Below, one piece after another: positions 2,196-62,226 of a stretch of DNA of 64,000 bases. Location: positions 124,001 through 188,000 of IMG/VR virus record IMGVR_UViG_3300030329_004647, one strand, 5' to 3'. The position numbers and the translations under genes are program-made. The notes under the pieces are model-generated. The model made no database searches. It saw nothing but the letters and a program-made list of their open reading frames with translations, and was not told the DNA's origin. Position 1 is the stretch's first letter, and each line of letters starts with the position of its first letter.

Positions 2196-2834
2196 TTATC
2201 TTTTTGAAGCGTGATATCCCGCTAATATTGATTTACAATGCTTTTCACTCTTACATTTTCTCCATACACCAAGCTTAGGGTCGTTATCATCTAAAATAAC
2301 CCAACCACCAGCTCTTTTTCTAATACAACCTTTTGGTGAGTCTTCACAGTAGTTTCCACCTTTCTTTTCTTTTAATATTCTTTTTAATCTTTCTACAATA
2401 GTTTTAACTTTTTTTGTAGATTCATTAGCTCCGAATCCCATCATTCCGTGTGCTGGACTATCTGGGTTAGAATCGTCACCCATTCCATCATCAGCCATAT
2501 CATCTTCATCATGTGGTGTTAACTGACCTGTTAGTTTTTCACCAGCCACTTTTTGTAAATTACTAATATCCTCACCCATTTCCTGAGAGATTTTTTTTCT
2601 TCTATTGGCTAAGTACTTGTCTGAGCTATCGACATCACCATCATTATCTATGTCCGCGTCCTCTTTTCCTACAGGGTCTAATTTGGTTTCACCCATCTCC
2701 TGTTTTACTCTTCCAGTTCCTATCATTCCCATATTACCCATGCTCGATATATTATTACCCATTTTTGCTTTTACAGTTTTTTCTATAAGAGCTATGAGTT
2801 CTGATTCTGTTAGTCTAATTTTTTTTGTTTTCAT
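2196..2834 (-). CDS. Putative internal head protein with Dx[DN]xDG motif
   Basis: N-terminal IRLTESELIALIEK; DPVGKEDADIDNDGDVDSSDKYL motif; charged, low complexity. Confidence 0.5.
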   Translation of the reverse strand: MKTKKIRLTESELIALIEKTVKAKMGNNISSMGNMGMIGTGRVKQEMGETKLDPVGKEDADIDNDGDVDSSDKYLANRRKKISQEMGEDISNLQKVAGEKLTGQLTPHDEDDMADDGMGDDSNPDSPAHGMMGFGANESTKKVKTIVERLKRILKEKKGGNYCEDSPKGCIRKRAGGWVILDDNDPKLGVWRKCKSEKHCKSILAGYHASKR

Positions 2835-4321
2835 ATTTCATTTACTACTTGGAATTTTATTACTCTTCTATAAGTATTTACTTGTTGGTTTGAAATCGCT
2901 TTTAAATCTATAAAATACTCATTTGGTATCATATCTCTAGTGTCTACTAGGAAATAGTTTTGGTTAAACGCTCTATTAACAGGAGTCCATGGTTGTGTTT
3001 CTACTTCTGTTGTTCCCTGTCTAACATATAATCTATAGTCTAAATTTTCTATAGCTACGTGTTCATTTACTGTGTATGGTACTCTTACAGATACTATTAC
3101 TTTTCTAATATCATCATTGGTTACCTTTTCATCTAATTTAATTCCAGATAAAGAAAATCCATATTCCTTAGGTAACTCATCATTAGTGCCGATTTGGTAA
3201 TAGGAAGTTTCTGGTAATATTGTAAATTCATTTGTTACATTAGATAAAGAAATATTATCTATAGACATATTTGACCATTGGTCTTGGAATAAACTAGGTG
3301 TTCCATATGTGTCTCCCGTGACATTTAACCCAACATAATAAACACCACAAGTACATTGTGTAGCTGTCATAGATGTATATACAACATCATCACAATCATA
3401 TATAGTTACTTGAGGTAAATTATCTAAATTAGTAGGTACCCCATTAGTGTTAACATACAAATACAATTTATTATTTTTTGATTTATAGAATTGATTTCTA
3501 TCGTCTTGTATTAAATCGTTATAATAAGTTAAAACATAAGGTTCATAAAAAGTTTGAGTATACTTTGTAAAAAACCCTACTGTGTAAGATTCTGTAAGTC
3601 CAGTTAACTCCTCAAATTCTACTGGATAAGACACAACATAAGTAATACCTGTTGTAATAGAAGTATCACCAGTCAACCTACGATTTATTTCGTCTGTCAT
3701 ATCAATAGAAATGTCTTCATTACCATTATCAAAAGATTGGGTTCCTAAGACTTCAAAAGTCGACGAATCATTACTTTGATAAGTTCCATGATAATCCCAA
3801 GGAGTTACCGTAGTAGCCGATAACCAATTACTAGGCCTTTGTGACCAAGTTCTATCCCACTCGGGAGCAAACATACCAGGAGCTTGTACAAAGTCATAAC
3901 CGATACCTTCGTCCCAAGTTACCCCAGTAACTTTTAATAGGTTTAAAATAAATGAACTAGCCCTATTTGAACCATTATTTAACTTATCCCTTAACAAGTC
4001 CTTATCAAACGAGGACGTATTAGTCATTTTTAATGTGTGTGAAACAGCACACTCACCAGTTAATATAATACAACCACTATCAACTTTTTCTTTAATAGCA
4101 GCAATATCTACATCAAAAATAAATCTAGAAAAGAAATTACCCGAAGAAAACGTATACCCTGTATTACCTCCACAGGTGTCCCCTGAGAGACCTGTATACT
4201 TACATGGGTTCGAGGTATCCCTACCATAGAAAAGTTCCATAACAGGGTTCTTTGCGGTGTTAACAAGGCTATTGTTAACAATAGTATTATTTTTTGAGAA
4301 GTATGATTTATAATAAGACAT
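2831..4321 (-). CDS. Putative virion structural (baseplate-region) protein
   Basis: 496 aa, beta-rich, Thr/Ser/Gly motifs, follows gp5-like gene, preceded by TATTTATT (4343-4336). Confidence 0.5.
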   Translation of the reverse strand: MSYYKSYFSKNNTIVNNSLVNTAKNPVMELFYGRDTSNPCKYTGLSGDTCGGNTGYTFSSGNFFSRFIFDVDIAAIKEKVDSGCIILTGECAVSHTLKMTNTSSFDKDLLRDKLNNGSNRASSFILNLLKVTGVTWDEGIGYDFVQAPGMFAPEWDRTWSQRPSNWLSATTVTPWDYHGTYQSNDSSTFEVLGTQSFDNGNEDISIDMTDEINRRLTGDTSITTGITYVVSYPVEFEELTGLTESYTVGFFTKYTQTFYEPYVLTYYNDLIQDDRNQFYKSKNNKLYLYVNTNGVPTNLDNLPQVTIYDCDDVVYTSMTATQCTCGVYYVGLNVTGDTYGTPSLFQDQWSNMSIDNISLSNVTNEFTILPETSYYQIGTNDELPKEYGFSLSGIKLDEKVTNDDIRKVIVSVRVPYTVNEHVAIENLDYRLYVRQGTTEVETQPWTPVNRAFNQNYFLVDTRDMIPNEYFIDLKAISNQQVNTYRRVIKFQVVNEI

Positions 4322-4343
4322 ATCTATTCTTTAATAATAAATA

Positions 4344-6248
4344 TCAATTAATTCTGATGTTTTGATTTAAAACTGTTTCTGAAGCCTCTTGTATCAGTTT
4401 ATCTAGCTCTCCTTTTTCATCATTAGCACCTGCATCCGCTTCTTTATTCGCACATGCATGTTTGTGGTCCTTTAAAAATTCTACTATTTTTTTAAGTAAT
4501 TTTATTAAAGGTTCACCCCTAACCATAGAATTAGTAGAACTATCAACTTCCTTTATTAATTGTTCTTGGGTTAATCCATAGTTATCTGTCATATTAACAG
4601 TTCCCTGAGTTCCGTCTGGTCCTGCACTATTAGAAGAATGAGACACAAAATATATTTTTTCAGCACTACCGACAACAAAACCCTGTTGTTGGTCAGGTAT
4701 AGTATTTAGTCTTTCATCTTCGAACTCTACAGTTTTAGTAGGTACACTATCATTATCAGTCATTTTTTTAGGCTCAATCATAAACCCATTATTGACTACA
4801 CTTCCTAATTTTATTTTATTACAAATCTCGTTTAACCCGTTACTAGCGACAGTAGGTGGTGTAGTGTCTAATCCATTTCTAGTTGTAGCATTAGGTCTAA
4901 ACCATAAAGGATGTGTATTTCCTTGAACAGCATTTGCCATACTCTCACTACCCTCTCCCGTATCAAAGTCAAATGATTTTGTTGGGTTATCTGGGTCCTG
5001 TTTTAAACATTCGGTCCAGTTATTATTATGAACTTCACTAATAAAATCATTAACTTCTTTTATATATTCTTCACTAGTAACACCATTAAACGATTGTTTA
5101 AATATTTGCCTTTGTTTAGGCACATCAACTGGAGTATCTCTCCAAGTCCTAGAACAAGTTAATTTTCCACTGGTATTTGTTGGAGCGACAACTTGACCAT
5201 CTACAACACCTCCTTGAGCGTTTTCAGGGACATTACCATCATTTTCAGGTATAGTAGTAGCACTAGTAGTAGCTCCTGACGCGTCATACCCCGTCATAAT
5301 ATAAAAACTAACACCACCATTAACAGTTTGACCAGTGCCTCCATTAAAAGTACCCCAATTATCAATATGATACTCAATAAACCCCCTCATATTTTGGTCA
5401 TCTAATTCCTCTCTAGTATTAGTAAATTTTTCTAAAACTAGTGTGTTTGGGAATGTAGCTAGTTGCATTCCAGTATATTTGGTATTAAAAGCAGGTGTAT
5501 TAGGTGTGGTTTGATTTCTTATCATAGCACCAGTTCTAATAAGAACTTGAGGATATTCCTCAAAACTTGTACTGTCTTGAAAAGAACCATCTTCTAGACG
5601 AGGACCTATTTGTTTTTGTGGGACTTTCTCCTTCATACCAAGGATAACATCAGCACCATCTAATTTACCACCTCCACCACGACCTTTTATAGCGATATCA
5701 CCTGGATTAGGTATTACACCTTTAGACTCCACTGATGAACTTATAGGCACACCTTTTTCAGGTCTAAAATCTACCTCTTTACTCGTCCACATACTTCCTT
5801 TAGAATAGTGTTCTTGATAACCACCTGTTTGGAATTGAGAAATAAGAGGACCTATGTACTCAGCGTTTTGACTTTTATTTATTGGGTCGTAGTATATTAT
5901 TTTATGTAACTCATCTTCTTTTGGAATAATATTAAGATGTTGTGGTAAAAATGGTGTAATAATAAACGGGTCACTATCTTCCCATGGAACATAATTAGGT
6001 ATTTCATTACTATTACCAAAATTACTTCTTCCTGTTTTAGCTTTTTTGTCTTCTTCTTGTACAAATGTTATAGCGTCTGCTAACTGTCCTACAATCTGGT
6101 CTTGACCAAAAGGTATTACAGAACGAATTCTACAAGCTCCTCTTGGGTCGTTATTATCTACACATACAGCTAAATCAATAACATGTGCACGAGCCCTAGC
6201 TTGTTTACCAGTAGTTCTTGGAGCTACAAAATTATTTCCTACCGCCAT
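4344..6248 (-). CDS. Baseplate hub/central spike protein (gp5/VgrG OB-fold-like)
   Basis: N-terminal CVDNNDPRGACRIRS resembles the gp5 OB-fold start; C-terminal RGEPL...HKH resembles a spike-tip HxH. Confidence 0.6.
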   Translation of the reverse strand: MAVGNNFVAPRTTGKQARARAHVIDLAVCVDNNDPRGACRIRSVIPFGQDQIVGQLADAITFVQEEDKKAKTGRSNFGNSNEIPNYVPWEDSDPFIITPFLPQHLNIIPKEDELHKIIYYDPINKSQNAEYIGPLISQFQTGGYQEHYSKGSMWTSKEVDFRPEKGVPISSSVESKGVIPNPGDIAIKGRGGGGKLDGADVILGMKEKVPQKQIGPRLEDGSFQDSTSFEEYPQVLIRTGAMIRNQTTPNTPAFNTKYTGMQLATFPNTLVLEKFTNTREELDDQNMRGFIEYHIDNWGTFNGGTGQTVNGGVSFYIMTGYDASGATTSATTIPENDGNVPENAQGGVVDGQVVAPTNTSGKLTCSRTWRDTPVDVPKQRQIFKQSFNGVTSEEYIKEVNDFISEVHNNNWTECLKQDPDNPTKSFDFDTGEGSESMANAVQGNTHPLWFRPNATTRNGLDTTPPTVASNGLNEICNKIKLGSVVNNGFMIEPKKMTDNDSVPTKTVEFEDERLNTIPDQQQGFVVGSAEKIYFVSHSSNSAGPDGTQGTVNMTDNYGLTQEQLIKEVDSSTNSMVRGEPLIKLLKKIVEFLKDHKHACANKEADAGANDEKGELDKLIQEASETVLNQNIRIN

Positions 6249-6426
6249 CTTTGTATCGTTTTTTCATTTCATCATTTAGAAGATTGTAATTTCCCTCAAC
6301 ACTATCTAAATGTAATGTAAGTTTTATAATAAGGTCTTTAGTCTTATCAAACTCAGTTTTTAATTTATCCATCTCCGTTAGAAGATGTTTATTAGGTTTA
6401 TCTTTATAGTCTTTTAAAATTTCCAT
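6232..6426 (-). CDS. Small coiled-coil hypothetical protein
   Basis: 64 aa, tightly coupled with neighbours. Confidence 0.55.
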   Translation of the reverse strand: MEILKDYKDKPNKHLLTEMDKLKTEFDKTKDLIIKLTLHLDSVEGNYNLLNDEMKKRYKDGGRK

Positions 6427-6428
6427 AG

Positions 6429-8534
6429 TTATAAATAAAGTCCATTTGATACTATAGGTGGTATAATGGTTAATCCTGGTGGACCACTCGCGGTAGCTGG
6501 GTCTGATATAGACTGCACCCGTCCATTAGTTGATTTTTCATCATCCATAGATTCTATTAAGGCAAATTGTCCTAATAAATCTAAATTAGGTTCACCACTA
6601 GGCATATCTCCGGTAGGATAACCAAATTCCTCTAGTTTAGTTATTAATTTTTCAAAAGTTCTAAGTGAACTAGTACCAGCTCTTTTCTTAGTCGCGAACA
6701 ACAACCAAGGAGGTACACCAAACGGTACGTCAGGCGCCACCGCTTCCAGTAACCTAAGTAATGTGTCTAAAATACTTTTACAGTCTTTTGCATTACGAAG
6801 TTCATCAATCCAAGGCATTAAAGCGTTAATTAATGCTGTTACTACTTTTATATATTTTTTACCCTTCTCCCCAATTATTCTTTTTAATTTATCCATTAAC
6901 ATTTTGGTTAAATAACCAATTACAATGTTAAATAATATTCTCACAACTTCAGCTAAAACTTCTCTAGCTATTCTTACAACTACTCGTTTAAATATTTTCA
7001 TCCATTCTTTTGGATTTGAAGCTAAAAGAGCGTTTTCATTTAAAAATTTATACACCAGTACCACAGGTAAACAAAGTTTTGGTGATAATAATGCAATCAT
7101 TAATATGTCAGGAAATTTTACAATTAATTCTTCTTTAAAATCTATAGACCAATCTAGTGGATTAAAATAAGGGTCTGGTTCCTTATCTGCAGACTCCGCT
7201 AGTCCATTTTGTATTATTAACTCAAAAGTTTTAAACCCACTACCAGCTTGAACTAGTTCAGCTTGAATAATATCATCTGCTGCATCTATAAAGGTTTGGA
7301 GGTCTAAAGGAATTTCTATTTCTGCACAGGATTGCAGCGCAATAACCCCTTTTCGTTTTCTATTAGTTTCATCCACCAAATTTTGTTGTTCCTCAACATT
7401 AAATCTAAACCATGAATCATCATCATCTAATTCTTGTATAAATTGTTTAGTATCTGTACCTACTTCACCCAAGTCTCCTCCATCACAAGCACCTATTATA
7501 TTATTAAGAACTTTAATTAATTCATTTATCCCTAAAAGGTCAGCAAGATTTACACCACCGTTTCCGAAAGTTATAAGTCCAGATAATAATTCTAATATTG
7601 CTCCTAATATGTTATGTAGTTGGAATAGACGTATGTTCTCAAAATAATCAACTACAAACTCAATTACAGTAAATTTTGTTCCGTCTCCAGGTGATGCTTG
7701 ACCACCAGGACCAGGACACCCATCAAACACACTATTGTTGTCTGCAGCACCACCATTACTAGCTTTGTAATGTGGTGAGATTTTAAGGTAATCACCACCA
7801 TCATATTCTATTGTAAAAAGATTTAAACCACTTTTACCTTGTACTTGATATGGTGTGTTAGGGTTTTGTAATAAAAAATGTAAAAATCTATTCATCGAAA
7901 AAGGTGTTGAACCCGCAACGTAGGGTTCAGCTTCATAAGCAAACTTCCCAACTCCCTCGTCAGGAGATAACTTTAAATTTTTGAATAAATCTATATGAGA
8001 TATTTTTATCTCTATGGGACACGAAATACCATCACCCACAACGGGTACATTCATACTTAAATCACAATTAAAAGCGGCAAGAATTTCTTCTATTACAATA
8101 TGTTTGATTTTAGGTATAACAGTAAATATGGCTTGTTTTATCACCTTACTTAATAAAGCTGAGTAATTAACCTGTGAAGCACGTAACATTTGTTTGTTAG
8201 CTCTTTCACGCCATGCTTGACCTTTATCCCTAGCGTCGTCCGCTTGAGCTTGAAGTTCTTCTTGACCTTGTTTTTTTGCTTTTTTTATGTTCGCACGAAA
8301 GTTCTCTTTTTTTTCTCTAACTTTACTACTGGAATTTTCATAAGCTTGTGTTTCCTTAATTAGAGTTAATAAAAAAGGTAGAGGGTTCTCAACAATTCCT
8401 TGTAGAGCCTTAAAAGTTTTTTTCCACTCTTCTAAGTTTTTCCTTTCCTTCTTTTGACCATCTAATTCTAGTAATCTAGTAAGAGCCTGGATTTGGGCAA
8501 TAATATCCTTTTTATCTTGTTTAGTATCTGACAT
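6429..8534 (-). CDS. Large hypothetical protein, probably virion/baseplate-associated
   Basis: 701-aa ORF in late operon upstream of spike gene. Confidence 0.5.
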   Translation of the reverse strand: MSDTKQDKKDIIAQIQALTRLLELDGQKKERKNLEEWKKTFKALQGIVENPLPFLLTLIKETQAYENSSSKVREKKENFRANIKKAKKQGQEELQAQADDARDKGQAWRERANKQMLRASQVNYSALLSKVIKQAIFTVIPKIKHIVIEEILAAFNCDLSMNVPVVGDGISCPIEIKISHIDLFKNLKLSPDEGVGKFAYEAEPYVAGSTPFSMNRFLHFLLQNPNTPYQVQGKSGLNLFTIEYDGGDYLKISPHYKASNGGAADNNSVFDGCPGPGGQASPGDGTKFTVIEFVVDYFENIRLFQLHNILGAILELLSGLITFGNGGVNLADLLGINELIKVLNNIIGACDGGDLGEVGTDTKQFIQELDDDDSWFRFNVEEQQNLVDETNRKRKGVIALQSCAEIEIPLDLQTFIDAADDIIQAELVQAGSGFKTFELIIQNGLAESADKEPDPYFNPLDWSIDFKEELIVKFPDILMIALLSPKLCLPVVLVYKFLNENALLASNPKEWMKIFKRVVVRIAREVLAEVVRILFNIVIGYLTKMLMDKLKRIIGEKGKKYIKVVTALINALMPWIDELRNAKDCKSILDTLLRLLEAVAPDVPFGVPPWLLFATKKRAGTSSLRTFEKLITKLEEFGYPTGDMPSGEPNLDLLGQFALIESMDDEKSTNGRVQSISDPATASGPPGLTIIPPIVSNGLYL

Positions 8535-8905: not shown

Positions 8906-8910
8906 AATAT

Positions 8911-8918
8911 TATAAATA
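8911..8918 (-). promoter_or_regulatory. Putative late promoter TATTTATA
   Basis: + strand TATAAATA at 8911-8918, heading the 8905-4344 operon. Confidence 0.6.
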
Positions 8919-8923
8919 TTTTG

Positions 8924-9625: not shown

Positions 9626-9631
9626 ACTTAC

Positions 9632-10432: not shown

Positions 10433-10437
10433 TTTAT

Positions 10438-38367: not shown

Positions 38368-38994
38368 TTAAAATTTTTCAGAAGAGGTTATTTTTCCGTA
38401 AAAAACTGTATCACCTACTTTAACTTGAAGATTTTCATCCATAGGACTTCTCATGGTTAGTCTTTCTTCTATTCTTTCATCTATAACTTCATCTATTACT
38501 TCACTAATAGATTCTTTTATGATGTTTTTTAAAGTAGATTTGTTTAATTTAACATTTTTGGTTGGTGTGGCATTAGGTTTAGACTCTACTATTCTTTGTG
38601 GTTGAGGAGATGAATTATTACCCGTATTCACATACTTATCCATTTTTTCTTTAATACCATCAGTAAACGAAGCAGGTAACTCATTACCCATTTGTATATC
38701 TGGTATAGGATGTTCAATCATTAATTTTTTAATGTCTTCTGGTAATCTAGAACCTTTTATTTTATCCTCAGTAATGCCTGCTTTAGGCTTCATATTCATC
38801 CCTGAATCTTTTCCTTTTATAAAATTTTGAGTTAAACTCGGTGGTTTTTTTTCTGAAAAAGAAGGCATTGACGACATGGAATTTGACTGTGTAAATGAAG
38901 CGTTTGAGATTGGTTGCATTTTGTCACCCTCAACCTTATTCATTACGTGTTTTGCTTTTAATAGTTTTTCCTGTAAAGTGGTAAAATCTGTCAT
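38368..38994 (-). CDS. Hypothetical protein (possible head-associated)
   Basis: 208 aa; LNKSTLKNIIKESISE motif. Confidence 0.5.
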   Translation of the reverse strand: MTDFTTLQEKLLKAKHVMNKVEGDKMQPISNASFTQSNSMSSMPSFSEKKPPSLTQNFIKGKDSGMNMKPKAGITEDKIKGSRLPEDIKKLMIEHPIPDIQMGNELPASFTDGIKEKMDKYVNTGNNSSPQPQRIVESKPNATPTKNVKLNKSTLKNIIKESISEVIDEVIDERIEERLTMRSPMDENLQVKVGDTVFYGKITSSEKF

Positions 38995-38996
38995 AT

Positions 38997-39389
38997 TTAA
39001 AATTTAGCGTTTAAAAGTACTCTATTCATCGATTTATCTCCAAAAGGGTTGTATAACGGGGGCTTAGAAAAATCCTCAAAAGCACCATCAACCATTTTAG
39101 GTTTAAAACTTTTTATTCTATCTAATCTAAACAACCTCCAATCAGGTAAAGGAATTCCTTCTTCATTCACCTTAAGTGAAGGTCCTTCGGTTTGATACGC
39201 TCTTAAAACTTTATTATTTCTTTTAGAAAGTCCTAAAGCTACTGGTTCTATGGTTCTTTTACCTGGACCCAGTTTAGAGTCGTCTTCATAACCTAGTTCA
39301 CAAACATGTTTATTTCTAATCGCGTCAGAAATTTCTGCTTGAGAAGCTTGCTCAAGAATAATATTTTTAAATATATTGTAAAGAGTCAT
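38997..39389 (-). CDS. Standalone WYL-domain protein
   Basis: Y...KRTIEPVALG...LRAYQ...WRLFRLDRI. Confidence 0.7.
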   Translation of the reverse strand: MTLYNIFKNIILEQASQAEISDAIRNKHVCELGYEDDSKLGPGKRTIEPVALGLSKRNNKVLRAYQTEGPSLKVNEEGIPLPDWRLFRLDRIKSFKPKMVDGAFEDFSKPPLYNPFGDKSMNRVLLNAKF

Positions 39390-39774: not shown

Positions 39775-40239
39775 TTATTTTAATTCAGTTATTATTTGTT
39801 TTATTCTTTTTATTTCTTCATATATAGGTTTATCACTATAAATAGACCTAGAATCATTTGGTGCCTTAACTAACCTAACTTTAGTTGCGTTTTTAGAGTT
39901 ATCTTTAGTGTGTTCTTTTTTAAACTGATTAGGCATCCCAGCGTTCATTCTTTGTCTTTTCCCAGACTCAATTGATTTACGTCTATGTTCTAGTTTACTA
40001 TTAACCCAATCTAATAACTCATCACCACCTATTAATTTATAGACCTTAGGGTCCATATCATTTTCCATCTCATGTTTTATTTTTTTAGCTTGACCATAAT
40101 TAACTCCTTTTTTTTCACATAGACCATTTAGTCTATCATACCCATTTTGTTTTTCATTAGAGTTGGACAGATTGGTTGTAAGTACCGATAGTAGTTCATC
40201 AGGTAACTTATAAAAATCATTTACTAAATCTTTGTTCAT
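39775..40239 (-). CDS. Hypothetical protein
   Basis: 154 aa; C-terminal YEEIKRIKQII. Confidence 0.5.
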   Translation of the reverse strand: MNKDLVNDFYKLPDELLSVLTTNLSNSNEKQNGYDRLNGLCEKKGVNYGQAKKIKHEMENDMDPKVYKLIGGDELLDWVNSKLEHRRKSIESGKRQRMNAGMPNQFKKEHTKDNSKNATKVRLVKAPNDSRSIYSDKPIYEEIKRIKQIITELK

Positions 40240-50094: not shown

Positions 50095-50703
50095 TTAATC
50101 TTCGTCTGTAATCTTATATTCTAGCTCCTGTCCTACAAGAGGTTCTTCTTTTTCAATCTCTATATCAACTTCGGATTCTTCTTCAGTTGGTGGAGTCATC
50201 ATTTCCTCATATTGTGTTAGTAAGTTTTGAACACCTCTACCAAACAAATCTTCATTACCTATATTATCTCTAAGGTCAAAAATATCTTGTACTAGTCTAT
50301 CTTGAGGAGAAATAGCCACCTCTGTTTCTTCCATTACTCTATGGACTATTCTTTTAAGTGTAGACTCATTTATTTTTACAACTTTTTTAGATTCATTCAT
50401 TCCTAATCCTTTAAATGTTCCATATCCTTCAGAGTTTTCATTTTTACCCTCAACCTCCATTTCTTTCATTTCTTCCATTTCAGTTTTTTCAGTATCCTCC
50501 ATTTCAGCTATCTCATCAGCTATTTTTCGTTGTGCTTTTGTTAACTCCTTAATGTCTGCGTTATACTTACCATGATTTTTTAAACCTTCTTTTGCAATCT
50601 TAAGAGCGTTGTATGCTGCTTTTAAGTCTGTTTTAGTATTCTTTGAATCACCCTCGTATAGGTTCATTAGAGTTTTACGTAGTTTAGATTTTATATTTTC
50701 CAT
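50095..50703 (-). CDS. Charged hypothetical protein (putative internal head protein)
   Basis: Start refined to MENIKSK with TATTTATT at 50727-50720; KKVVKINESTLKRIV motif. Confidence 0.5.
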   Translation of the reverse strand: MENIKSKLRKTLMNLYEGDSKNTKTDLKAAYNALKIAKEGLKNHGKYNADIKELTKAQRKIADEIAEMEDTEKTEMEEMKEMEVEGKNENSEGYGTFKGLGMNESKKVVKINESTLKRIVHRVMEETEVAISPQDRLVQDIFDLRDNIGNEDLFGRGVQNLLTQYEEMMTPPTEEESEVDIEIEKEEPLVGQELEYKITDED

Positions 50704-51192
50704 ACTGTTGTGTTTTAATAATAAATATTTACTACACCAATAAAGATACATTAGGATTATAGTATAAATTTTTTCTTTATAAAAAAGCGGTATTTAATTA
50801 TAATATTTTAATCACATTTAGAGCTAGTCTTTAAAAAGTAAAAAACAATAAAAAAATAGTTAAGTTTGTCGTAAAAATATTAACAACAGAAATAGTAACA
50901 TAGCTAAACTTATGACAATTAGCTGTAATTAAATAAAAATCACCCTAAAACCTTGACTTATTTTACGACAATTTTATATTAAAACTTGGAAAAATTAGAG
51001 TAAATTAGTGAAAATAATGGAAAATAATTGATATTAAAAAAAATACGTCTAACGTGTGTATAAACGTAAGTTTTTTAATAATTAAAATTAAGTTTGTATT
51101 ATTGACTACTATGGTTGGGGTTAAAATATGGGTTTTTAGTAATAATAACGGGTATTTATGACTACCAATAACAGTTATAAAAAATAGTGATT

Positions 51193-52012: not shown

Positions 52013-52038
52013 AACCCTGACGACGGTCAGGGTTTTTT
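52013..52038. terminator. Intrinsic terminator between convergent genes
   Basis: AACCCTGAC-GACG-GTCAGGGTT-TTTT. Confidence 0.85.
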
Positions 52039-52690
52039 ATTGCTTAGACTTTAAAGTATCACTAACATTATTCCAGTTAACAACTTTCCAGAAATTTTTT
52101 ATATATTTTTTTCTATCGGACATGTAATTAAGGTAATAAGCGTGTTCCCACACATCTAAACCTAGTAGAGGTTCCCCTAATCCTTCCATTAAAGGATTAT
52201 CTTGATTGGGTGTTGTAACTATTTTAAGTCGTCCATTTTTTAACACCAACCAACACCAACCAGAACCAAATACTTTACCTGACTCTTCGTCAAACTGTCT
52301 TTTAAAATTATCAAGACTACCAAAATCTTTATTTATTTTTTGTCTTAGTTCTTTAGACAAGTCTGTTTTGTTGGGGGTGATATAATCTTTAAAAAATAAA
52401 CTATGATTATAATACCCACCAGCATTATTCCTAGTAAAAGTATCATAATTTTTAATACCTTTAATAATTTTTTCTATGTCTTTTGGTGGGTTTTTTCTTT
52501 TAGATAGAGCTTCATTTAGTTTTGTTGTATACCCCTTATAATGTTTATTATAATGTTCCCACATTGTTTCATAACCCACGAAATCTTTAACAGAATTATA
52601 ATCATATGGTAGACTAACCCTCTTAAAAAATGATTTTTTAGCTTCCGCTATAATATTTTCGTTTAATATTTTCTTAATTAAATTTCTCAT
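52037..52690 (-). CDS. sodA: Fe/Mn superoxide dismutase (Mn-type signature)
   Basis: HYNKH, NNAGGYYNHSLFF, FGSGWCWL, NQDNP, DVWEHAYY. Confidence 0.9.
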   Translation of the reverse strand: MRNLIKKILNENIIAEAKKSFFKRVSLPYDYNSVKDFVGYETMWEHYNKHYKGYTTKLNEALSKRKNPPKDIEKIIKGIKNYDTFTRNNAGGYYNHSLFFKDYITPNKTDLSKELRQKINKDFGSLDNFKRQFDEESGKVFGSGWCWLVLKNGRLKIVTTPNQDNPLMEGLGEPLLGLDVWEHAYYLNYMSDRKKYIKNFWKVVNWNNVSDTLKSKQ

Positions 52691-54906: not shown

Positions 54907-54912
54907 TATATA

Positions 54913-54955
54913 CAAATATAATAAATTCTCTAATATAAACAATTAAGTATTTATC
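54913..54955. promoter_or_regulatory. Divergent promoters: minus TTG-N19-TATATTTG (helicase) and plus TATTTATC (neck gene)
   Basis: CAAATATA 54913-54920, CAA 54940-54942; TATTTATC 54948-54955. Confidence 0.65.
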
Positions 54956-54960
54956 TATAT

Positions 54961-56567: not shown

Positions 56568-56728
56568 CCCTCTCCGTATATATCACTTTTTTGTTTACAA
56601 TTTTTTTCTATTAACTTTTCTATATACCTGGATAGGAGTAAACCATGTTTTTTACAATACCTTTTAAGTATTCTATGGTATTCTTCTCGAATCTTTAAAT
56701 TTTTTATTTTTTTGTTGTTTTCTTTCAT
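56564..56728 (-). CDS. Ribbon-helix-helix (Arc/CopG-like) DNA-binding protein, 54 aa (not in ORF track)
   Basis: MKENNKKIKNLKIREEYHRILKRYCKKHGLLLSRYIEKLIEKNCKQKSDIYGEG: beta strand, helix, G turn, helix. Confidence 0.65.
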   Translation of the reverse strand: MKENNKKIKNLKIREEYHRILKRYCKKHGLLLSRYIEKLIEKNCKQKSDIYGEG

Positions 56729-56749
56729 AGGTAGAAAAAAGGTAGAAAA
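56729..56749. repeat. Tandem direct repeat AGGTAGAAAA x2 (11-bp period), candidate operator
   Basis: Copies at 56729-56738 and 56740-56749, abutting the RHH start codon. Confidence 0.55.
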
Positions 56750-56808
56750 TATTCATACTTTACAATAAATAGTACGTTTTTAGCAATACCTTTTCGGTTG
56801 GGAAAAAG

Positions 56809-56816
56809 TATTTATC
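56809..56816 (+). promoter_or_regulatory. Putative late promoter TATTTATC for tail sheath
   Basis: Recurring motif; an opposite copy at 56764-56771 faces the RHH gene. Confidence 0.55.
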
Positions 56817-56855
56817 TAATGATAAAATAAATTTATTTAGTAAAAAAAGACAAAT

Positions 56856-59800
56856 ATGGCTAACGGTAATAATAGAGTATTCGTATCTCCAGGGGTATAC
56901 ACCTCGGAAAAAGATTTAAGTTTTGTAGCACAGAGTGTTGGTGTTACAACATTAGGTTTGGTCGGAGAGACCAAAAAAGGGCCAGCTTTTGAACCAATCT
57001 TTGTAAGTAATTATAGTGACTTTACAACTAGATTTGGTAGTACATCAGCTGACAAATTTGTTGATACACAAATTCCTAAACACGAATTAGCATTTATAGC
57101 AAAATCTTACTTATCACAATCAAATCAATTGTTTGTGACAAGAGTATTAGGATTAAATGGTTATGATGCAGGACCATCTTGGTCAATAACAACAATCGGT
57201 GAAGTAGACCCACTATACGTTTCTGCTGCAACATCAGCTCAAACAACGAGTAACTGGAGTGACATTATTTACATTCCAATGACCTCAACTACCGCTACGC
57301 CAGACGGAATATATTTAACATATAACTCTGCGACAGGAAAGTTTAGTGACCCTATCACTGATATGACAACATTTGGGGGTGCCAATTTCCCAATTCAAAA
57401 TTACCAACTAACAGGCCAAACATTTATTAATGGGTATGGAACTACTTTAGGTACTTTTATTGATGAAATAACCTCTTTTGTTAACACAGTAAATGGTGGG
57501 GACAATATGTCTTGGGATGGTTCAGGACTAAGTCAATACTGGTATTATGGTGTATTAGGTACAGGAACAACTGTTGGTGGTGAAGGAGCAAATAGTTTTT
57601 GTGAACATTACGCTAACACGTGGATGACAGGTAATACATCAGGATTATCCATTCAAGCAATAGACCATGAAAATAGATTAGCTGTTGACGCTTCAAACTT
57701 CTATGATGACCAAAATGATGGTTGGTATGACACTTTATTCGAGTATGAATATGGTGAAGGTGCTAACTGTTACTGTACTTCTTATTCAGGTTCTTCATTT
57801 GATATGTTTGGTTATTCAGCTTTAACAGCTCAAACATATATAGATGAAGTTGACTTAAGTACTAGTGGAGCAAGTACATTCTTTGCTGGTGGACAATTTA
57901 ATAATGACCCAACATCAGGAGGAACAAGTACAGAATGGTCAGGAGCTACAGGAGTAAATGGAACAGGTGGACAAGCTGTAATATCGTTTACGGCTACTAG
58001 TAGTGGTGGTCCAGAAACTTGGGCATACAGAATTGGTTCAACATCAGCTAACGCAACAGGTGTAGTAGCTAATGTATGGAGTTCCCTATACCAAACACCA
58101 GTGGGAACATATGATAGTATAGGACCTGTAACGACACATCCTTATGTACCATCTGATTTTGACGAGGTATTATCAGGAGGAACAGCATCCACAACAACAG
58201 TATTAAAGAGTAATCCATATCCAGTACCATTAACGCCATTCGATTTCGCGAAGAGTGGTACAACTTGTGATACTAGTATAGGAGCTTACTCAGCTGTTTC
58301 AGTAATTTATAGTGGATTTGCTAATATTGGTAGTTTAGTAGGTGGTAACTTAGGTGGAGCAGGAACTGGATTCGACCAAGGTAATCTATCTTCAGGTATT
58401 TCACATACCTTTGTTGGTTTCTCTGGAGCTGACGGACCAAACTCATATTCTGGGACACTTGCTGTTAATATGGTATTCTATAGTGCTGATTGTCAATCAC
58501 AAAATCTGTTAACATTACAATTAAGTGGTTGTGCAGCTGAATATCAAAATGTAAGTGCAGACACTGAATATCACAACTTAGTAGTGGCAACAATGAGAGC
58601 TAGAGGACAAAGTTCACTTTCTACAGGAGGACCAGTCTATACAATTAGTGGTTCATCATCATCCTCAACAGGAGCTTACGGTGATGTAACATTTAATTGT
58701 TTAGGAGCTTACCAACCAATAGTTGATGACCCATTCTTTAATTTTGGTATAAGTGCTAGAACGGATGGTGGAGCAACATATAACTTTGATGTGAGCATGA
58801 ATACATCATCTAAAAATTACCTACCAAAAGTATTAGGTAGAAATGTATTTGATAAAAAAATGGAGGAAGTTCCTATTTTTGTTGAGGAAGTTTACCCTAA
58901 TATCCTAAAATATGGATTTAATAGAAATAGAATTAGAGGCCTAAACTGTTGTTTATTAAAATTACCAGCAGCAAGATGGAACAATACAGGTATGGATTCT
59001 ATAGGTTGGTACATGCAACAATGGCAAACACCAGAAACACCTTACGTAGTTTCAGAATTACGAGGTGAGGATGTATATAGACTATTTAAATTTGTTTCTA
59101 TTTCAGACGGTACAGAAGCAAATAGAGAATATAAAGTATCAATTATAAACATTTCATTTGAAAGATTAGAGTTTGATGTATTAGTTAGAGATTTCTATGA
59201 TAGTGACGCTAGTCCTGTTGTTTATGAAAAATTCACAAGATGTAGTTTAGACCCATCATTACCTTCTTTTATAGGAAGAAAAATAGGTACTTCAGATGGT
59301 CAATACGAATTAAGGTCTAAATACACAATGTTATATTTAACTGAAGAGGTTTTAGATGGAACACTTAAAGACGCTGTTCCAGCAGGTTTTGATTACTACG
59401 ATTTTAGAAATTATGAAAACGGTGCTGGTAAAACGTGTAGAGCTATTCCACCGATGTTAAAATATAAAACAAAATACTTTACGGCTGGAGAAGTAGTTTA
59501 TGACCCACCTTATGATAACGCTGACGGAAGTGCTAACTCTTATATATCACCAGGTGACAATGTGAGAAAAACATATTTAGGTATTTCTGACACAGTAGGT
59601 GCAGCTATAGATTTTGATTTCTTCGAGTATAAAGGTAAGAAAACACCAGTATCGGTTTGTACAGATGTTAATGGTGTAAGTTGGGGAACAATCAGAAAAG
59701 GTTTCCATATGGATTCAGGAGCTACAATAATTGTTGCGGGTTCTGGAACGTATATAACACAATCGGGTACAACTCTTAGTGGTGACTCTATCTTTGAGGT

Positions 59801-60941
59801 GGGAGCAGCAGACTTTAGAGGTGAACCAGCATCAAGTAATCACCCATACAAAAAACTAAATTCTCGTAAATTTACTTTAGCACCTTATGGTGGTTTTGAT
59901 GGATGGGATGAATACCGTAAGTTTAGAAGTAATGGTGATTCCTATAGACTTGGACTACAAGGATTCTTAAATGGAGCGTGTAATGACGCGGTTTACCCGT
60001 CAGCTGTAGGAGACGGTTCATTTAAAGCTCTAAGTAGTACTGAAGCAAATACGGATTATTTTGCATACCTTAGAGGTGTACAAACATTCCAAAACCCAGA
60101 AGCGGTTAATATTAATGTATTTGCTACACCAGGTATTGACTACGTTAACAACCAATCTCTAGTTAAAGAATCTATAGATATGGTAGAAAGTCAAAGAGCT
60201 GACTCGTTATATATTACGACAACACCTGACTTTAACATGTACGTACCAACATCTTCAGATGTGACAAATCAAATATCACCAACAGAAGCTGGAGATAATT
60301 TAGAGGACTCACTAATAGATTCTAACTATACGGCAACGTATTATCCATGGATTTTGGTTAGAGATGACAATAGTAATAAACAAATCTATATACCACCAAC
60401 ATCAGAGGTTACTAGAAACTTAGCATTAACTGATAATGTAGCATTCCCTTGGTTCGCTTCAGCAGGTTATACACGTGGTTTAGTAAACGCACAAAGAGCT
60501 AGAAGAAAACTGACTCAGGACGAAAGAGATACGTTATATGTTGATAGAATTAACCCAATAGCGACATTCTCAGATGTAGGACCAATTATTTTTGGACAGA
60601 AAACTCTACAAATTAAAGAGTCTGCTCTTGACAGAATTAATGTTAGAAGATTATTATTACAAACAAGAAAACTAATTTCCGCGGTAGCTGTTAGACTACT
60701 ATTCGAACAAAATGATGATGTAGTAAGACAACAATTCTTAGACCTAGTTAACCCTATATTAGATTCTATTAGAAGAGATAGAGGTTTAACAGACTTTAGA
60801 GTTGTACTTTCTAACGACCCAGAAGAAATTGATAGAAATGAATTAAATGGTAAGATTTACTTAAAACCTACAAGAGCGTTAGAGTTTATCTTCATAGAAT
60901 TCTTGATAACACCAACTGGAGCAGAATTTGAATCAGTTTAA
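56856..60941 (+). CDS. Contractile tail sheath protein (gp18-like) with large insertion
   Basis: VSPGVYTSEKDLS, GETKKGPAFEP, WFASAGYTRG, RINPI, GQKTLQ, LDRINVRRLL, IYLKPTRALEFI. Confidence 0.92.
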   Translation: MANGNNRVFVSPGVYTSEKDLSFVAQSVGVTTLGLVGETKKGPAFEPIFVSNYSDFTTRFGSTSADKFVDTQIPKHELAFIAKSYLSQSNQLFVTRVLGLNGYDAGPSWSITTIGEVDPLYVSAATSAQTTSNWSDIIYIPMTSTTATPDGIYLTYNSATGKFSDPITDMTTFGGANFPIQNYQLTGQTFINGYGTTLGTFIDEITSFVNTVNGGDNMSWDGSGLSQYWYYGVLGTGTTVGGEGANSFCEHYANTWMTGNTSGLSIQAIDHENRLAVDASNFYDDQNDGWYDTLFEYEYGEGANCYCTSYSGSSFDMFGYSALTAQTYIDEVDLSTSGASTFFAGGQFNNDPTSGGTSTEWSGATGVNGTGGQAVISFTATSSGGPETWAYRIGSTSANATGVVANVWSSLYQTPVGTYDSIGPVTTHPYVPSDFDEVLSGGTASTTTVLKSNPYPVPLTPFDFAKSGTTCDTSIGAYSAVSVIYSGFANIGSLVGGNLGGAGTGFDQGNLSSGISHTFVGFSGADGPNSYSGTLAVNMVFYSADCQSQNLLTLQLSGCAAEYQNVSADTEYHNLVVATMRARGQSSLSTGGPVYTISGSSSSSTGAYGDVTFNCLGAYQPIVDDPFFNFGISARTDGGATYNFDVSMNTSSKNYLPKVLGRNVFDKKMEEVPIFVEEVYPNILKYGFNRNRIRGLNCCLLKLPAARWNNTGMDSIGWYMQQWQTPETPYVVSELRGEDVYRLFKFVSISDGTEANREYKVSIINISFERLEFDVLVRDFYDSDASPVVYEKFTRCSLDPSLPSFIGRKIGTSDGQYELRSKYTMLYLTEEVLDGTLKDAVPAGFDYYDFRNYENGAGKTCRAIPPMLKYKTKYFTAGEVVYDPPYDNADGSANSYISPGDNVRKTYLGISDTVGAAIDFDFFEYKGKKTPVSVCTDVNGVSWGTIRKGFHMDSGATIIVAGSGTYITQSGTTLSGDSIFEVGAADFRGEPASSNHPYKKLNSRKFTLAPYGGFDGWDEYRKFRSNGDSYRLGLQGFLNGACNDAVYPSAVGDGSFKALSSTEANTDYFAYLRGVQTFQNPEAVNINVFATPGIDYVNNQSLVKESIDMVESQRADSLYITTTPDFNMYVPTSSDVTNQISPTEAGDNLEDSLIDSNYTATYYPWILVRDDNSNKQIYIPPTSEVTRNLALTDNVAFPWFASAGYTRGLVNAQRARRKLTQDERDTLYVDRINPIATFSDVGPIIFGQKTLQIKESALDRINVRRLLLQTRKLISAVAVRLLFEQNDDVVRQQFLDLVNPILDSIRRDRGLTDFRVVLSNDPEEIDRNELNGKIYLKPTRALEFIFIEFLITPTGAEFESV

Positions 60942-60962
60942 AACTAAATAAAAATTATTACG

Positions 60963-61247
60963 ATGGAATTGAATAAAGAAATTTTAATAGAAAGTTTAGG
61001 TGTGAAGTCGACTGGAGCTAAACATTTTACTAATAATAAAAAACAATCAGTTATTATAAGTGAAAAACAACTCGAAAGATTAGTAGAAAAATATGTCAAT
61101 GAAGATGAAAATGTTGTTAATATCGACATACCATCGGGAAGTAACGTAGAAGTTACCCCAAAAGATGAAGATATGGCAGAAGATGTTGTAGCAGGAATCG
61201 ACAATGACATGATTGATGAGGAAGAATCTTGTCCAGACGATGTTTAA
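60963..61247 (+). CDS. Small acidic hypothetical protein
   Basis: ILIESLG and IISEKQLERLVE motifs. Confidence 0.55.
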   Translation: MELNKEILIESLGVKSTGAKHFTNNKKQSVIISEKQLERLVEKYVNEDENVVNIDIPSGSNVEVTPKDEDMAEDVVAGIDNDMIDEEESCPDDV

Positions 61248-61275
61248 TCTACATTAAGTTTACTTCTTAATATTA

Positions 61276-61307
61276 TATAAAAAACTCCTACACAGGAGTT
61301 TTTTATA
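61276..61307. terminator. Intrinsic terminator
   Basis: TATAAAAAACTCCT-ACAC-AGGAGTTTTTTATA. Confidence 0.8.
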
Positions 61308-61365
61308 TTATAACCATATAGTTTATGTAAGTTGTATTAACAAAATGTTTTAATATTTATAAGAT

Positions 61366-62226
61366 ATGAGTAAAATTATCATAACAGCAAAACAACTAGA
61401 ACATCTAAGTAATGTAGTTAAAGAACAAGCTAGAGCAAATAATGGTGCTGTAAGAGCTTATTCTTTTGATTGGGACGACAATATCCTCCATATGCCTACT
61501 AAAATTGCAATTGATTACAATAACGGCACAGAATGGGTACCAACCCTCATAACCACTGAAATGTTTTCTAAGGTAAGAGAAAATGAAAATTTTAGGGTAA
61601 ATGAAGATTCCTTTGTTAATTTTAGAAATGATAATGTTTTTTTTGACGACCTTAATGAAGCTTTACAAAAAAGAAGTTTCGCTCCTTCTTTTGAAAAATT
61701 TAAAGAATCTTTAATATACGCTAATCCTTTTTCTATTATTACAGCAAGAGGACATACACCAGAAGTTTTTCCTAAAGGTATAAAAGTAATAATTGGAAAT
61801 ACTTTTAGTGAGGGAGAACTAGAAGATATGTTATTTAACATTAAGAAGAAATATCCAGAAACTGTGGACTATTCACCGTGGGACGCGATTGATTTTTATT
61901 TAAATGAAAATGAATACCACCCTGTAACATCCGAAGAATTCGGTAAAAAATTCGGAAATAGGTTCATCAATACGGATAACCCTGAAGAAGCTAAAAAAAC
62001 AGCACTTAGAAATTATATAGAAAAAGTTGTAAACGGTGTTAGTAAAATAGAAGATGGTAATTATTCACAATTATCTATAGGTTTTAGTGACGATGACTAC
62101 GGTAATATAAGTGCTGTAATAAATTTAATAAAAGATGAACTAAACCAAAAGTATCCACAAGTAAATTTTGTTGTATATGACACATCTAGTGGTGACATAA
62201 ACAAAATTGTAGTTAAAAGAGAATAG
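61366..62226 (+). CDS. HAD-superfamily hydrolase-like protein
   Basis: FDWDDNIL, IITARGH, IGFSDDD; TATTTATA at 61354-61361. Confidence 0.6.
   Translation: MSKIIITAKQLEHLSNVVKEQARANNGAVRAYSFDWDDNILHMPTKIAIDYNNGTEWVPTLITTEMFSKVRENENFRVNEDSFVNFRNDNVFFDDLNEALQKRSFAPSFEKFKESLIYANPFSIITARGHTPEVFPKGIKVIIGNTFSEGELEDMLFNIKKKYPETVDYSPWDAIDFYLNENEYHPVTSEEFGKKFGNRFINTDNPEEAKKTALRNYIEKVVNGVSKIEDGNYSQLSIGFSDDDYGNISAVINLIKDELNQKYPQVNFVVYDTSSGDINKIVVKRE

What the first reader, a model, noticed from the sequence alone, without database searches (positions are those of the whole stretch)
2196..62226. Shared I/L-x-E 'capsid-targeting'-like peptide on unrelated proteins
Seen: similar amphipathic peptides recur. 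2196 KKIRLTESELIALIEK; 50095 KVVKINESTLKRIV..VMEE; 60963 IISEKQLERLVEKYVNE; 61366 IIITAKQLEHLSNVVKEQ; SOD MRNLIKKILNE..IAEA; WYL MTLYNIFKNIILEQ; 38368 LNKSTLKNIIKESISE; first ORF LIQEQ. Most of these genes sit behind the late motif. Known: T4 internal proteins carry an N-terminal capsid-targeting sequence removed by the prohead protease after (I/L)xE. Inference: a portable tag that loads diverse cargo into the head for injection.
Basis: partly seen in the sequence, partly recalled or inferred. Interest (0 to 1): 0.75.

Follow-up and report, generated by a model that had tools for sequence, protein, structure and literature searches.

The report
Portable peptide tags on jumbo-phage proteins
An uncultured T4-like jumbo phage puts one of four short, conserved peptide tags on about 12% of its otherwise unrelated proteins, most likely as protease-removable address labels that load them into the phage head; the tags themselves are well supported, but that function is inferred, not shown.

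Summary
The recurring peptide is real but was lumped. The window belongs to a 232-kb IMG/VR phage contig. It has a T4-type portal, an S77 prohead protease, a scaffold-like protein and a gp23-like capsid protein.

Profile searches separate four tag families cleanly from reversed-sequence controls:
- A: KKIxLTExxLxxIVxxVIxEQ, 12 proteins, five of them in the window.
- B: MKxLIKKILRE, 7 proteins, including the SOD.
- C: SExEKNRIRGLH.TES, 8 proteins.
- D: EEINRIKxLMG..L.EQ, 4 proteins, including the ORF that runs into the window start.

That is 31 of 261 ORFs. The WYL protein does not qualify.

Tag A alone marks 6,491 protein clusters in 1.84 billion. It is nearly always at residue 1. It is common in viral contigs and almost absent from 185,000 prokaryote genomes. 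All 10 large tag-bearing contigs tested encode the S77 protease.

The tags end in [I/L/V]-x-E with a near-invariant Glu, which is the T4 gp21 cleavage format. The capsid protein has an invariant LINE|A at its predicted maturation site. Internal tags often follow an h-x-E-S/N site. Orthologues swap tag A for tag B. Tagged genes tend to sit behind the late-promoter-like motif.

A capsid-targeting propeptide role is the best reading (about 0.55). No cleavage or virion data exist.

The parts
2760..2825 (-). Tag A at residues 4-25 of the 212-aa ORF 2196-2834 (KKIRLTESELIALIEKTVKAKM). This copy lacks the terminal Glu.
   Evidence: Profile hit of 27.4 bits; translation checked. The cargo carries an acidic Asp-rich dockerin/EF-hand-like motif.
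38497..38559 (-). Internal tag A at residues 146-166 of the 208-aa ORF 38368-38994 (KNVKLNKSTLKNIIKESISEV).
   Evidence: Profile hit of 21.8 bits and 15.1 bits with the iterated profile. It is the weakest true member.
50320..50385 (-). Internal tag A at residues 123-144 of the 218-aa ORF 50095-50751. It is preceded by GMNE|S and ends in VMEE.
   Evidence: Profile hit of 29.1 bits; flanking residues shown.
61044..61109 (+). Internal tag A at residues 28-49 of the acidic 94-aa ORF 60963-61247, which lies directly after the sheath gene.
   Evidence: Profile hit of 31.2 bits; translation checked.
61369..61431 (+). N-terminal tag A (the IIIT.KQL variant) of the 286-aa ORF 61366-62226. This is a conserved core gene between sheath and tube with a DWDDN motif.
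   Evidence: Profile hit of 26.8 bits. There are 2,665 homologues, all about 286 aa, and they keep the tag. In the AF2 model the tag helix (residues 8-25) has pLDDT 50-59, and the core starts at residue 29.
52634..52690 (-). N-terminal tag B (MRNLIKKILNE...) on the Fe/Mn superoxide dismutase ORF 52037-52690.
   Evidence: Tag B profile hit of 27.4-27.8 bits. The Pfam Sod_Fe_N match starts at residue 25, so the tag is an extension of about 20 aa.
1..25 (+). End of an N-terminal tag D (...GLKLIQEQ) on a 419-aa ORF that starts 55 nt upstream of the window and ends at 1204.
   Evidence: Tag D profile hit of 38.2 bits. The ORF is at genome coordinates 123945-125204.
39348..39389 (-). N-terminus of the WYL-domain protein (MTLYNIFKNIILEQ). 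It looks tag-like but is not a supported member.
   Evidence: Below 1 bit with the tag A profile, and absent from all lists made with the iterated profiles. The WYL domain itself is confirmed.
56856..62785 (+). Context: tail sheath (56856-60941) and tail tube (62297-62785), which bracket two tagged genes. Neither of these two structural proteins carries a tag.
   Evidence: N-terminal sequences. The late-promoter-like motif lies upstream of both.

Best explanation
The peptides are portable, protein-level address tags of a clade of uncultured T4-like jumbo phages.

Each tag is a short extended segment followed by a basic amphipathic helix that starts at an S/T-E-x-D/E/Q cap. There are four sequence classes in two superfamilies: A and B are related, and C and D are related.

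Inferred mechanism:
1. During prohead assembly the tag binds a component of the scaffolding core.
2. The attached cargo is therefore enclosed in the head.
3. The gp21-type (S77) prohead protease then cuts after the conserved [I/L/V]-x-Glu at the tag boundary. For internal or C-terminal tags it may also cut at an h-x-E-S/N site on the other side.
4. This frees the cargo, which stays in the head and can be ejected into the host.

What is shown: the tags exist, they are modular, and they always occur with the protease in the genomes tested. They also have the cleavage-site format, and tagged genes are enriched behind the late-promoter-like motif.

What is inferred: binding to the core, cleavage, residence in the virion, and injection.
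For: - Motif reality. Four profiles separate 31 of 261 ORFs from reversed controls with a wide score gap. At positions where two copies have the same amino acid, 42% use different codons, so the conservation is at protein level.
- Unrelated cargo. M23 + PG_binding + SLT peptidoglycan hydrolase, VanY peptidase, a CarboxypepD_reg domain, DeoC aldolase, Fe/Mn SOD, and many ORFans.
- T4-type head module. Portal, S77 protease and gp23-like capsid protein are present. LINE|A is invariant in 68 of 68 capsid proteins and is followed by a variable stretch. The scaffold-like protein is enriched in [LIVM]xE: 24 against 15.8 expected, p = 0.01.
- Tag boundary. P3 is I/V/L in 100%, P2 is variable, and P1 is Glu in 148 of 150 and 54 of 60 copies, with Asp almost never seen. 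In T4, Asp at P1 blocks processing (PMC9026906).
- Polar linker after the tag, and a low-confidence, detached tag helix in the AF2 model.
- Internal tags have h-x-E-S/N within 14 aa upstream in 33% of cases, against 4% of control windows, p = 7e-13.
- Tag swapping. Orthologues of one Cys-rich basic protein next to the capsid gene carry a C-terminal tag B (5 relatives) or tag A (2 relatives), in 6 of the 7 after KNES (one has QNET).
- Late-promoter-like motif enrichment, p = 9e-5.
- Distribution of tag A. It marks 6,491 protein clusters, mostly starting at residue 1.
- Ten of 10 large tag-bearing contigs that were found by the tag alone encode the S77 protease.
Against: - There are no proteomic, cleavage or virion data.
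- There is no sequence homology to the T4 CTS.
- Four of the 12 tag A copies in this genome lack the terminal Glu.
- Only a third of internal tags have a clear upstream site.
- A complete 56-aa protein consists of two tags and no cargo. This suggests the tag may have a function of its own.
- The cargo includes ordinary cytoplasmic enzymes (SOD, DeoC), whose delivery by the virion is not obviously useful.
- The invariant Glu could instead be a structural feature of the helix.
- The complex prediction with protease and scaffold gave no answer.
Confidence: 0.55

Rival explanations
1. The tags are permanent docking or oligomerisation modules. They tether many proteins to a common hub, such as an inner body, a tail or baseplate part, or an intracellular assembly. 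They are not removed, so the conserved Glu is structural rather than a cleavage site.
For: - Complete proteins consist only of two tags.
- 43 of the top 150 tag A proteins carry 2-3 tags, which suggests multivalent binding.
- Two tagged genes sit between the sheath and tube genes.
- The peptidoglycan hydrolase cargo matches families annotated as tail-associated lysins as well as internal virion proteins.
- Some copies lack the Glu.
Against: - The strict preference for Glu over Asp, with a variable P2, matches a protease site better than an exposed helix position.
- A polar linker follows the tag, and the tag helix is detached in the model.
- Internal tags are enriched for upstream h-x-E-S/N sites.
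- Canonical tail, portal and capsid proteins carry no tag.
Confidence: 0.22
2. The tags are recognition elements for the phage-encoded chaperone or unfoldase pair, a DnaK homologue and a ClpA/B-like AAA+ protein. They would serve folding, disaggregation or timed degradation of late proteins.
For: - The DnaK-like and Clp-like genes lie next to the tag-rich region, at genome coordinates 98675-102897.
- The closest large relative also has an Hsp70.
- The tags are hydrophobic cores flanked by basic residues, the general style of Hsp70-binding peptides (established knowledge, not tested here).
Against: - Hsp70 was found in only 1 of 5 related contigs, although these are fragments.
- This idea does not explain the invariant terminal Glu, the h-x-E-S/N sites before internal tags, or the perfect co-occurrence with the S77 protease.
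- Four distinct conserved sequences are more than a promiscuous chaperone would need.
Confidence: 0.1
3. The tags are amphipathic helices that bind membrane or DNA, for example half of a ribbon-helix-helix motif. They would localise proteins in the infected cell rather than in the virion.
For: - The strand-plus-helix pattern resembles the start of RHH domains, and there are weak sub-threshold hits to RelB-like antitoxin and Ant families.
- The helix is basic and amphipathic.
- Several cargoes act on the cell envelope.
Against: - No second helix follows the tag, and no Pfam family reaches its threshold.
- The two tags in one chain are not predicted to pair (pTM 0.33).
- There is no hydrophobic signal-peptide core.
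- This idea does not explain the link to the protease or the boundary sites.
Confidence: 0.06

Closest known systems
[quoted passage not shown]
   Same: - A short N-terminal peptide is shared by otherwise unrelated proteins.
- It ends in [I/L]-x-Glu.
- The phage has a gp21-family (S77) protease, a gp20-type portal and a gp23-type capsid protein.
- Tag B (MKxLIKKILRE, 11 aa) has the same length and layout as MKTYQEFIAE.
- The T-even internal proteins are likewise diverse, with only the CTS conserved (PMC3012670, PMC8442874, PMC9026906).
   Different: - There is no sequence homology.
- There are four tag classes instead of one, and tags A, C and D are about twice as long.
- The tags are basic rather than acidic.
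- About 12% of genes are tagged, against a handful in T4.
- Tags also occur internally, at C-termini and in multiple copies.
- The cargo includes enzymes such as SOD, an aldolase and peptidoglycan hydrolases.
- Nothing has been shown experimentally.
Propeptides of phiKZ, 201phi2-1 and SPN3US giant-phage head and ejection proteins
   Same: - Many head proteins (tens) are processed after Glu by a diverged gp21-like protease.
- Propeptides are thought to target proteins into the prohead.
- Paralogues can share identical N-termini, and multiple cleavage sites occur per propeptide (PMC5694885, PMC9026906).
   Different: - Those propeptides are mostly longer than 100 residues, and the cleavage motif is S/A/G-x-E.
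- They are not a short portable consensus shared by unrelated proteins.
- The phage lineage is different.
Encapsulin cargo-loading peptides
   Same: Short terminal peptides address diverse enzymes to the interior of an HK97-fold shell. The peptides are modular and transferable.
   Different: Those peptides bind the shell protein directly, are not cleaved, and belong to bacterial nanocompartments rather than phage heads. No encapsulin-type shell gene was looked for in this genome.
Phage P1 Dar anti-restriction proteins, packaged through N-terminal regions and dependent on DarA/Hdf
   Same: Head-internal proteins that are injected with the DNA. Their incorporation is tied to head morphogenesis (PMC12810830, PMC9024508, listed).
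   Different: No shared consensus tag is known for them, and the head assembly system is different. These papers were not read in detail here.

Membership tests
T4-type capsid targeting sequence / gp21-processed propeptide | The phage encodes a gp21-family (Peptidase_S77) prohead protease within a T4-type head module. | tested here: met
   PF03420 scores 88.7-88.9 bits, Portal_T4 scores 260 bits and Gp23 scores 206 bits. All 10 of 10 independent tag-bearing large contigs also have the S77 protease.
T4-type capsid targeting sequence / gp21-processed propeptide | The tag is a short peptide (10-20 aa) at the extreme N-terminus. | tested here: met
   28 of 32 tags in this genome begin within the first residues of the ORF, after three obvious start corrections. 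142 of 196 tag A copies in the global top 150 are N-terminal. Exceptions exist: three internal tags in the window, and C-terminal tags in relatives.
T4-type capsid targeting sequence / gp21-processed propeptide | The tag ends in the protease motif: hydrophobic (L/I) at P3, any residue at P2, Glu at P1. | tested here: met
   For tag A, P3 is I/V/L in 100% of copies and P1 is Glu in 148 of 150 and 54 of 60. Tag B ends in IL[RKN]E. Tag C ends in [LI]TE|S or LHE|S. Tag D ends in L.(Q)E|Q. Four of the 12 tag A copies in this genome lack the Glu.
T4-type capsid targeting sequence / gp21-processed propeptide | The same tag is found on otherwise unrelated proteins. | tested here: met
   Different Pfam domains, or none, lie behind the same tag. 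Tag A and tag B swap on orthologues.
T4-type capsid targeting sequence / gp21-processed propeptide | Sequence relationship to the T4 CTS MKTYQEFIAE. | tested here: not met
   There is no detectable similarity beyond the format, by comparison of the consensus sequences. There was no tblastn hit of tag A in 50,697 cultured phage genomes.
T4-type capsid targeting sequence / gp21-processed propeptide | The tag is cleaved off in the prohead and the cargo is present in mature virions. | not testable with these tools
   The phage is uncultured and no proteomics are available. The complex prediction gave no answer.
T4-type capsid targeting sequence / gp21-processed propeptide | The tag is sufficient to package a foreign protein. 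| not testable with these tools
   This needs a packaging assay.
phiKZ-like giant-phage propeptides | Long propeptides (often more than 100 aa) cleaved at S/A/G-x-E. | tested here: not met
   The tags are 11-24 aa and P3 is I/L/V, never S/A/G. The motif definition is taken from PMC9026906.
Ribbon-helix-helix DNA-binding domain | A strand-helix-helix unit of about 45 aa that is recognised by RHH profiles. | tested here: not met
   Only sub-threshold hits were seen (RelB_like_antitoxin at E = 0.046; phrog_847 at E = 8e-4 over 29 residues). No second helix follows the tag, and the sequence after the tag is variable.
Encapsulin cargo-loading peptide | A cargo peptide paired with a dedicated encapsulin shell gene, and not proteolytically removed. 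| not tested
   No encapsulin search was run. The only HK97-fold shell gene identified is the gp23-like capsid protein.

The most novel reading that the evidence does not exclude
The four tag classes form a combinatorial packaging code. Each class would address cargo to a different receptor, layer or ejection order inside the head of T4-like jumbo phages. Thousands of uncharacterised tagged proteins in aquatic viromes would then be a catalogue of injected effectors: anti-defence factors, envelope-active enzymes and metabolic enzymes. Tag-only peptides would act as cross-linkers or regulators of loading.
Probability: 0.15. Interest if true: 0.9.

Novelty: new variant of a known kind. Interest (0 to 1): 0.72.

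Why it matters
If the tags are packaging signals, a simple sequence rule would predict the injected protein arsenal of a large, uncultured clade of jumbo phages. That arsenal cannot currently be identified without virions. Tag A alone marks more than 6,000 protein clusters, almost all of unknown function, and their first expected site of action would be the newly infected cell.

It would also extend the T4 CTS principle from one tag and a few proteins to a multi-tag system covering about an eighth of a genome. It would supply natural, short, transferable loading peptides for putting proteins into phage heads.

Even if the function turns out to be different, the tags are a widespread conserved element that is missing from Pfam, PHROGs and the searched literature.

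Tried and rejected
- Complex prediction of S77 protease + scaffold-like protein + a 76-aa tagged protein gave a score of 0.00. The tool states this is no evidence either way.
- A Foldseek search of the 286-aa cargo model against the PDB gave no significant match.
- An ESM Atlas look-up of the tag returned only unnamed clusters.
- The search for related loci with the tagged M23/SLT protein found no close relatives.
- A tblastn search of a consensus-like tag A protein against 50,697 cultured phage genomes gave no match.
- The nearest cultured relative by capsid protein, Flavobacterium phage immuto (40% identity), has no tag A.
- Pfam on 58 global tag A proteins found almost no domains.
- Literature searches for the tag strings and for related concepts found nothing describing them.
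- A two-tag protein is not predicted to fold back on itself (pTM 0.33).
- pI does not distinguish tagged from untagged proteins.
- A DNA-level repeat, such as a shared leader or recombination site, was rejected because codons differ at conserved residues.
- Paralogy of whole proteins was rejected because the cargo domains differ.
- The genome search 'relatives' is not available for a virus record.
Full report
**What the window is.** The window is bases 124001-188000 of a single 232,028-bp IMG/VR virus contig. The contig has 31% GC and CheckV rates it 72% complete. I called 261 ORFs with a simple greedy longest-ORF procedure, not a trained gene finder.

The genome has a T4-type head module just upstream of the window:
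- a gp20-type portal (PF07230, 260 bits);
- a Peptidase_S77 prohead protease (88.9 bits);
- an acidic 473-aa scaffold-like protein;
- a gp23-type major capsid protein (206 bits).

The window itself holds a 1,361-aa sheath, a tube protein, a family B DNA polymerase, an SNF2 helicase, a Mom-family protein and a long sugar-metabolism cluster. The closest cultured phages by capsid protein are only about 40% identical: Flavobacterium phage immuto and Microcystis phage Mel-JY01. More than 597 IMG/VR contigs have capsid proteins at 65-80% identity.

**Checking the observation.** 'Amphipathic with I/L-x-E' is too loose to mean anything, because [LIVM]xE occurs about twice per 100 residues across the proteome.

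A specific motif is real, however. A strict pattern occurs 6 times against 0.01 expected from shuffles. A profile of 22-mers hits exactly 12 proteins at 22-34 bits. The next score is 5.5 bits, and the best score on the reversed proteome is 7.0 bits.

**Four tags, not one.** An all-against-all comparison of the first 40 residues of every ORF showed four N-terminal families. Profiles confirmed them:
- Tag A: KKIxLTExxLxxIVxxVIxEQ, 12 proteins.
- Tag B: MKxLIKKILRE, 7 proteins.
- Tag C: (I)LSExEKNRIRGLH.TES, 8 proteins.
- Tag D: EEINRIKxLMG..L.EQ, 4 proteins, plus a second internal copy in a tag C protein.

That makes 31 of 261 ORFs. The ORFs at 2196, 38368, 50095, 60963 and 61366 carry tag A. 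The SOD carries tag B. The 'first ORF' carries tag D on an ORF that begins 55 nt before the window. WYL is not a member.

A and B are related: in an orthologue alignment, tag B lines up with the helix half of tag A. C and D cross-hit each other's profiles.

Conservation is at the protein level. At positions where two copies share an amino acid, 42% use different codons.

**The cargo is unrelated.** The proteins behind the tags include:
- a Peptidase_M23 + PG_binding_1 + SLT protein;
- a VanY peptidase;
- a CarboxypepD_reg domain protein;
- a DeoC aldolase;
- a Fe/Mn superoxide dismutase, in which the tag is an extension of about 20 residues before the Pfam domain;
- an 892-aa ORFan (tag A);
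- many other ORFans.

Canonical sheath, tube, portal, capsid and large baseplate-sized proteins have no tag.

**Distribution.** The tag A profile finds 6,491 cluster representatives at E <= 0.001 among 1.84 billion proteins. In the top 150, the tag nearly always starts at residue 1, the consensus is MKKVIRLTESDLvRIVKRVIkEQ, and protein lengths range from 30 to 509 aa. Of these 150, 43 carry two or three copies. Those sampled are unnamed metagenomic proteins with almost no Pfam domains.

It hits only one 3-kb MAG contig in 185,579 prokaryote genomes.

Contigs reached through tag A proteins show runs of same-strand genes. Many of these start with an A-, B-, C- or D-type tag. Related contigs carry all four classes. 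Complete genomes of 257-412 kb hold 7-17 tag A genes each.

All ten large contigs that were found by the tag alone encode an S77 protease.

The tag is not in Pfam or PHROGs as a family. No paper in the searched library contains the tag strings.

**Evidence on mechanism.** In T4, gp21 cleaves after L/I-X-E. The first 10 residues of IPIII (MKTYQEFIAE) suffice for head targeting. Asp at P1 blocks processing. The T-even internal proteins share only this CTS. Alt also has a C-terminal propeptide (PMC9026906, PMC8442874, PMC3012670).

In this phage:
- The capsid protein has an invariant L-I-N-E|A in 68 of 68 relatives. It follows the conserved ..ENQ.. propeptide stretch and precedes a variable Ser/Thr-rich stretch. 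This is upstream of the segment that aligns with mature T4 gp23*.
- The scaffold-like protein is enriched in [LIVM]xE: 24 observed against 15.8 +/- 3.2 from shuffles.
- At the end of tag A, P4 and P3 are V/I/L, P2 is variable (K, N, S...), and P1 is Glu in 148 of 150 global and 54 of 60 clade copies. Asp is seen only twice. P1' is mostly Gln.
- Tags B, C and D also end in hydrophobic-x-Glu.
- The 12 residues after the tag are enriched in Pro, Ser and Gln and depleted in hydrophobic residues.
- In an AF2 model of the 286-aa window protein (40-sequence alignment), the tag is a low-confidence helix with pLDDT 50-59. The fold begins at residue 29.
- Internal tags have [LIVMFAG]xE[SN] within 14 residues upstream in 19 of 58 cases, against 4% of control windows (p = 7e-13). 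Examples are GMNE|S before the tag in ORF 50095 and KNE|S before C-terminal tags in relatives.
- A Cys-rich basic protein family encoded next to the capsid gene carries a C-terminal tag B in five relatives and tag A in two, in six of the seven after KNES (one has QNET). The tags are therefore interchangeable modules.
- The motif [AGT]TATTTAT(A) is 12-fold enriched upstream of genes. It lies 13-50 nt before the protease, scaffold, sheath and tube genes. It is significantly more frequent before tagged genes. I read it as a late-promoter analogue of T4's TATAAATA; that reading rests on my own knowledge of T4.

**What does not fit or remains open.**
- Four tag A copies in this genome lack the terminal Glu.
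- Most internal tags lack an obvious upstream site.
- A complete 56-aa gene encodes nothing but two tags. Its model shows two helices with no confident packing.
- It is not obvious why SOD or an aldolase would be loaded into heads.
- A DnaK homologue and a Clp-like ATPase sit beside the tag-rich region, which keeps a chaperone-recognition idea alive. Hsp70 was seen in only one of five related fragments.
- The one complex prediction allowed returned no answer.

**Conclusion.** The capsid-targeting reading is the best-supported explanation, at a probability of about 0.55, but it rests entirely on sequence logic.

The closest known system is the T4 CTS. The membership features that could be tested are met: the protease, the position, the cleavage format and the unrelated cargo. 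Sequence homology is not met, and the defining biochemical features could not be tested.

I rate it a new variant of a known kind. The tag families themselves appear to be undescribed.

Noticed in passing
window 13271-35449 (- strand): A run of about 22 kb of sugar-nucleotide and glycan genes in a phage. By N-terminal sequence it includes NAD-dependent epimerases/dehydratases and a GDP-mannose dehydratase-like protein. It also has a DegT aminotransferase, a HAD + nucleotidyltransferase fusion, and GT2/GT4 glycosyltransferases. None of these genes is tagged.
   Followed up: partly
window 62819-63445 (-): A Mom-family protein (PF25680, 96 bits), which suggests DNA base modification in this phage.
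   Followed up: no
genome 98675-102897 (outside the window; G000:C1): A phage-encoded DnaK/Hsp70 homologue (618 aa) and a ClpA/B-like AAA+ protein (674 aa) lie next to the tag-rich region. An Hsp70 is also present in the closest large relative, G004.
   Followed up: partly
P0027, P0030, P0052 (L263:701-871): Proteins of 55-56 aa that consist of two tag A copies joined by a short basic linker, with no cargo. P0052 is a complete gene inside its contig.
   Followed up: partly
relatives, e.g. L044:4035-4499, L032:8484-9176, G001:108711-109412: A conserved Cys-rich, very basic protein family (WFGTKKKPKGS...GPWVNICRK...PPCGRP...KCRA) is encoded a few kb from the capsid gene. It ends in KNES (QNET in one member) followed by a C-terminal tag A or tag B. 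It looks like a DNA-associated internal protein.
   Followed up: partly
window 2196-2834 (residues 36-98) and genome 57418-58512: An Asp-rich motif of dockerin/EF-hand type (DADIDNDGDVDSSDKYLANRRKKI) is shared with several PHROG families of unknown function (phrog_4359, 38880, 727). It occurs on two differently tagged proteins.
   Followed up: no
whole genome; window examples upstream of 61366, 4321, 41015/41072: Two upstream motifs partition the genes. [AGT]TATTTAT(A) lies 13-50 nt before structural and tagged genes and is late-promoter-like. A Bacteroidota-style TAnnTTTG lies before 29 other genes. Two secreted proteins have Bacteroidota-type signal peptides ending in ...YSQ or ...YGQ, which points to a Bacteroidota host.
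   Followed up: partly
window 39775-39840 (-), C-terminus of ORF 39775-40239: The C-terminal EEIKRIKQIITELK resembles tag C/D and ends in I-T-E, but it is below the profile thresholds. The segment KTIVERLKRILKE after ANES in ORF 2196-2834 is similar: a degenerate second tag.
   Followed up: no
window 50095-50751 (-): The listed ORF probably starts too early, at MYLYWCSKYLL.... Met17 (MENIKSKL) is a more plausible start. Genome ORFs 59090, 83314 and 120721 likewise have better starts that put their tags at the N-terminus.
   Followed up: no
L131:1725-2894: An IS605 OrfB/TnpB-type gene sits inside a tag-rich viral contig.
   Followed up: no
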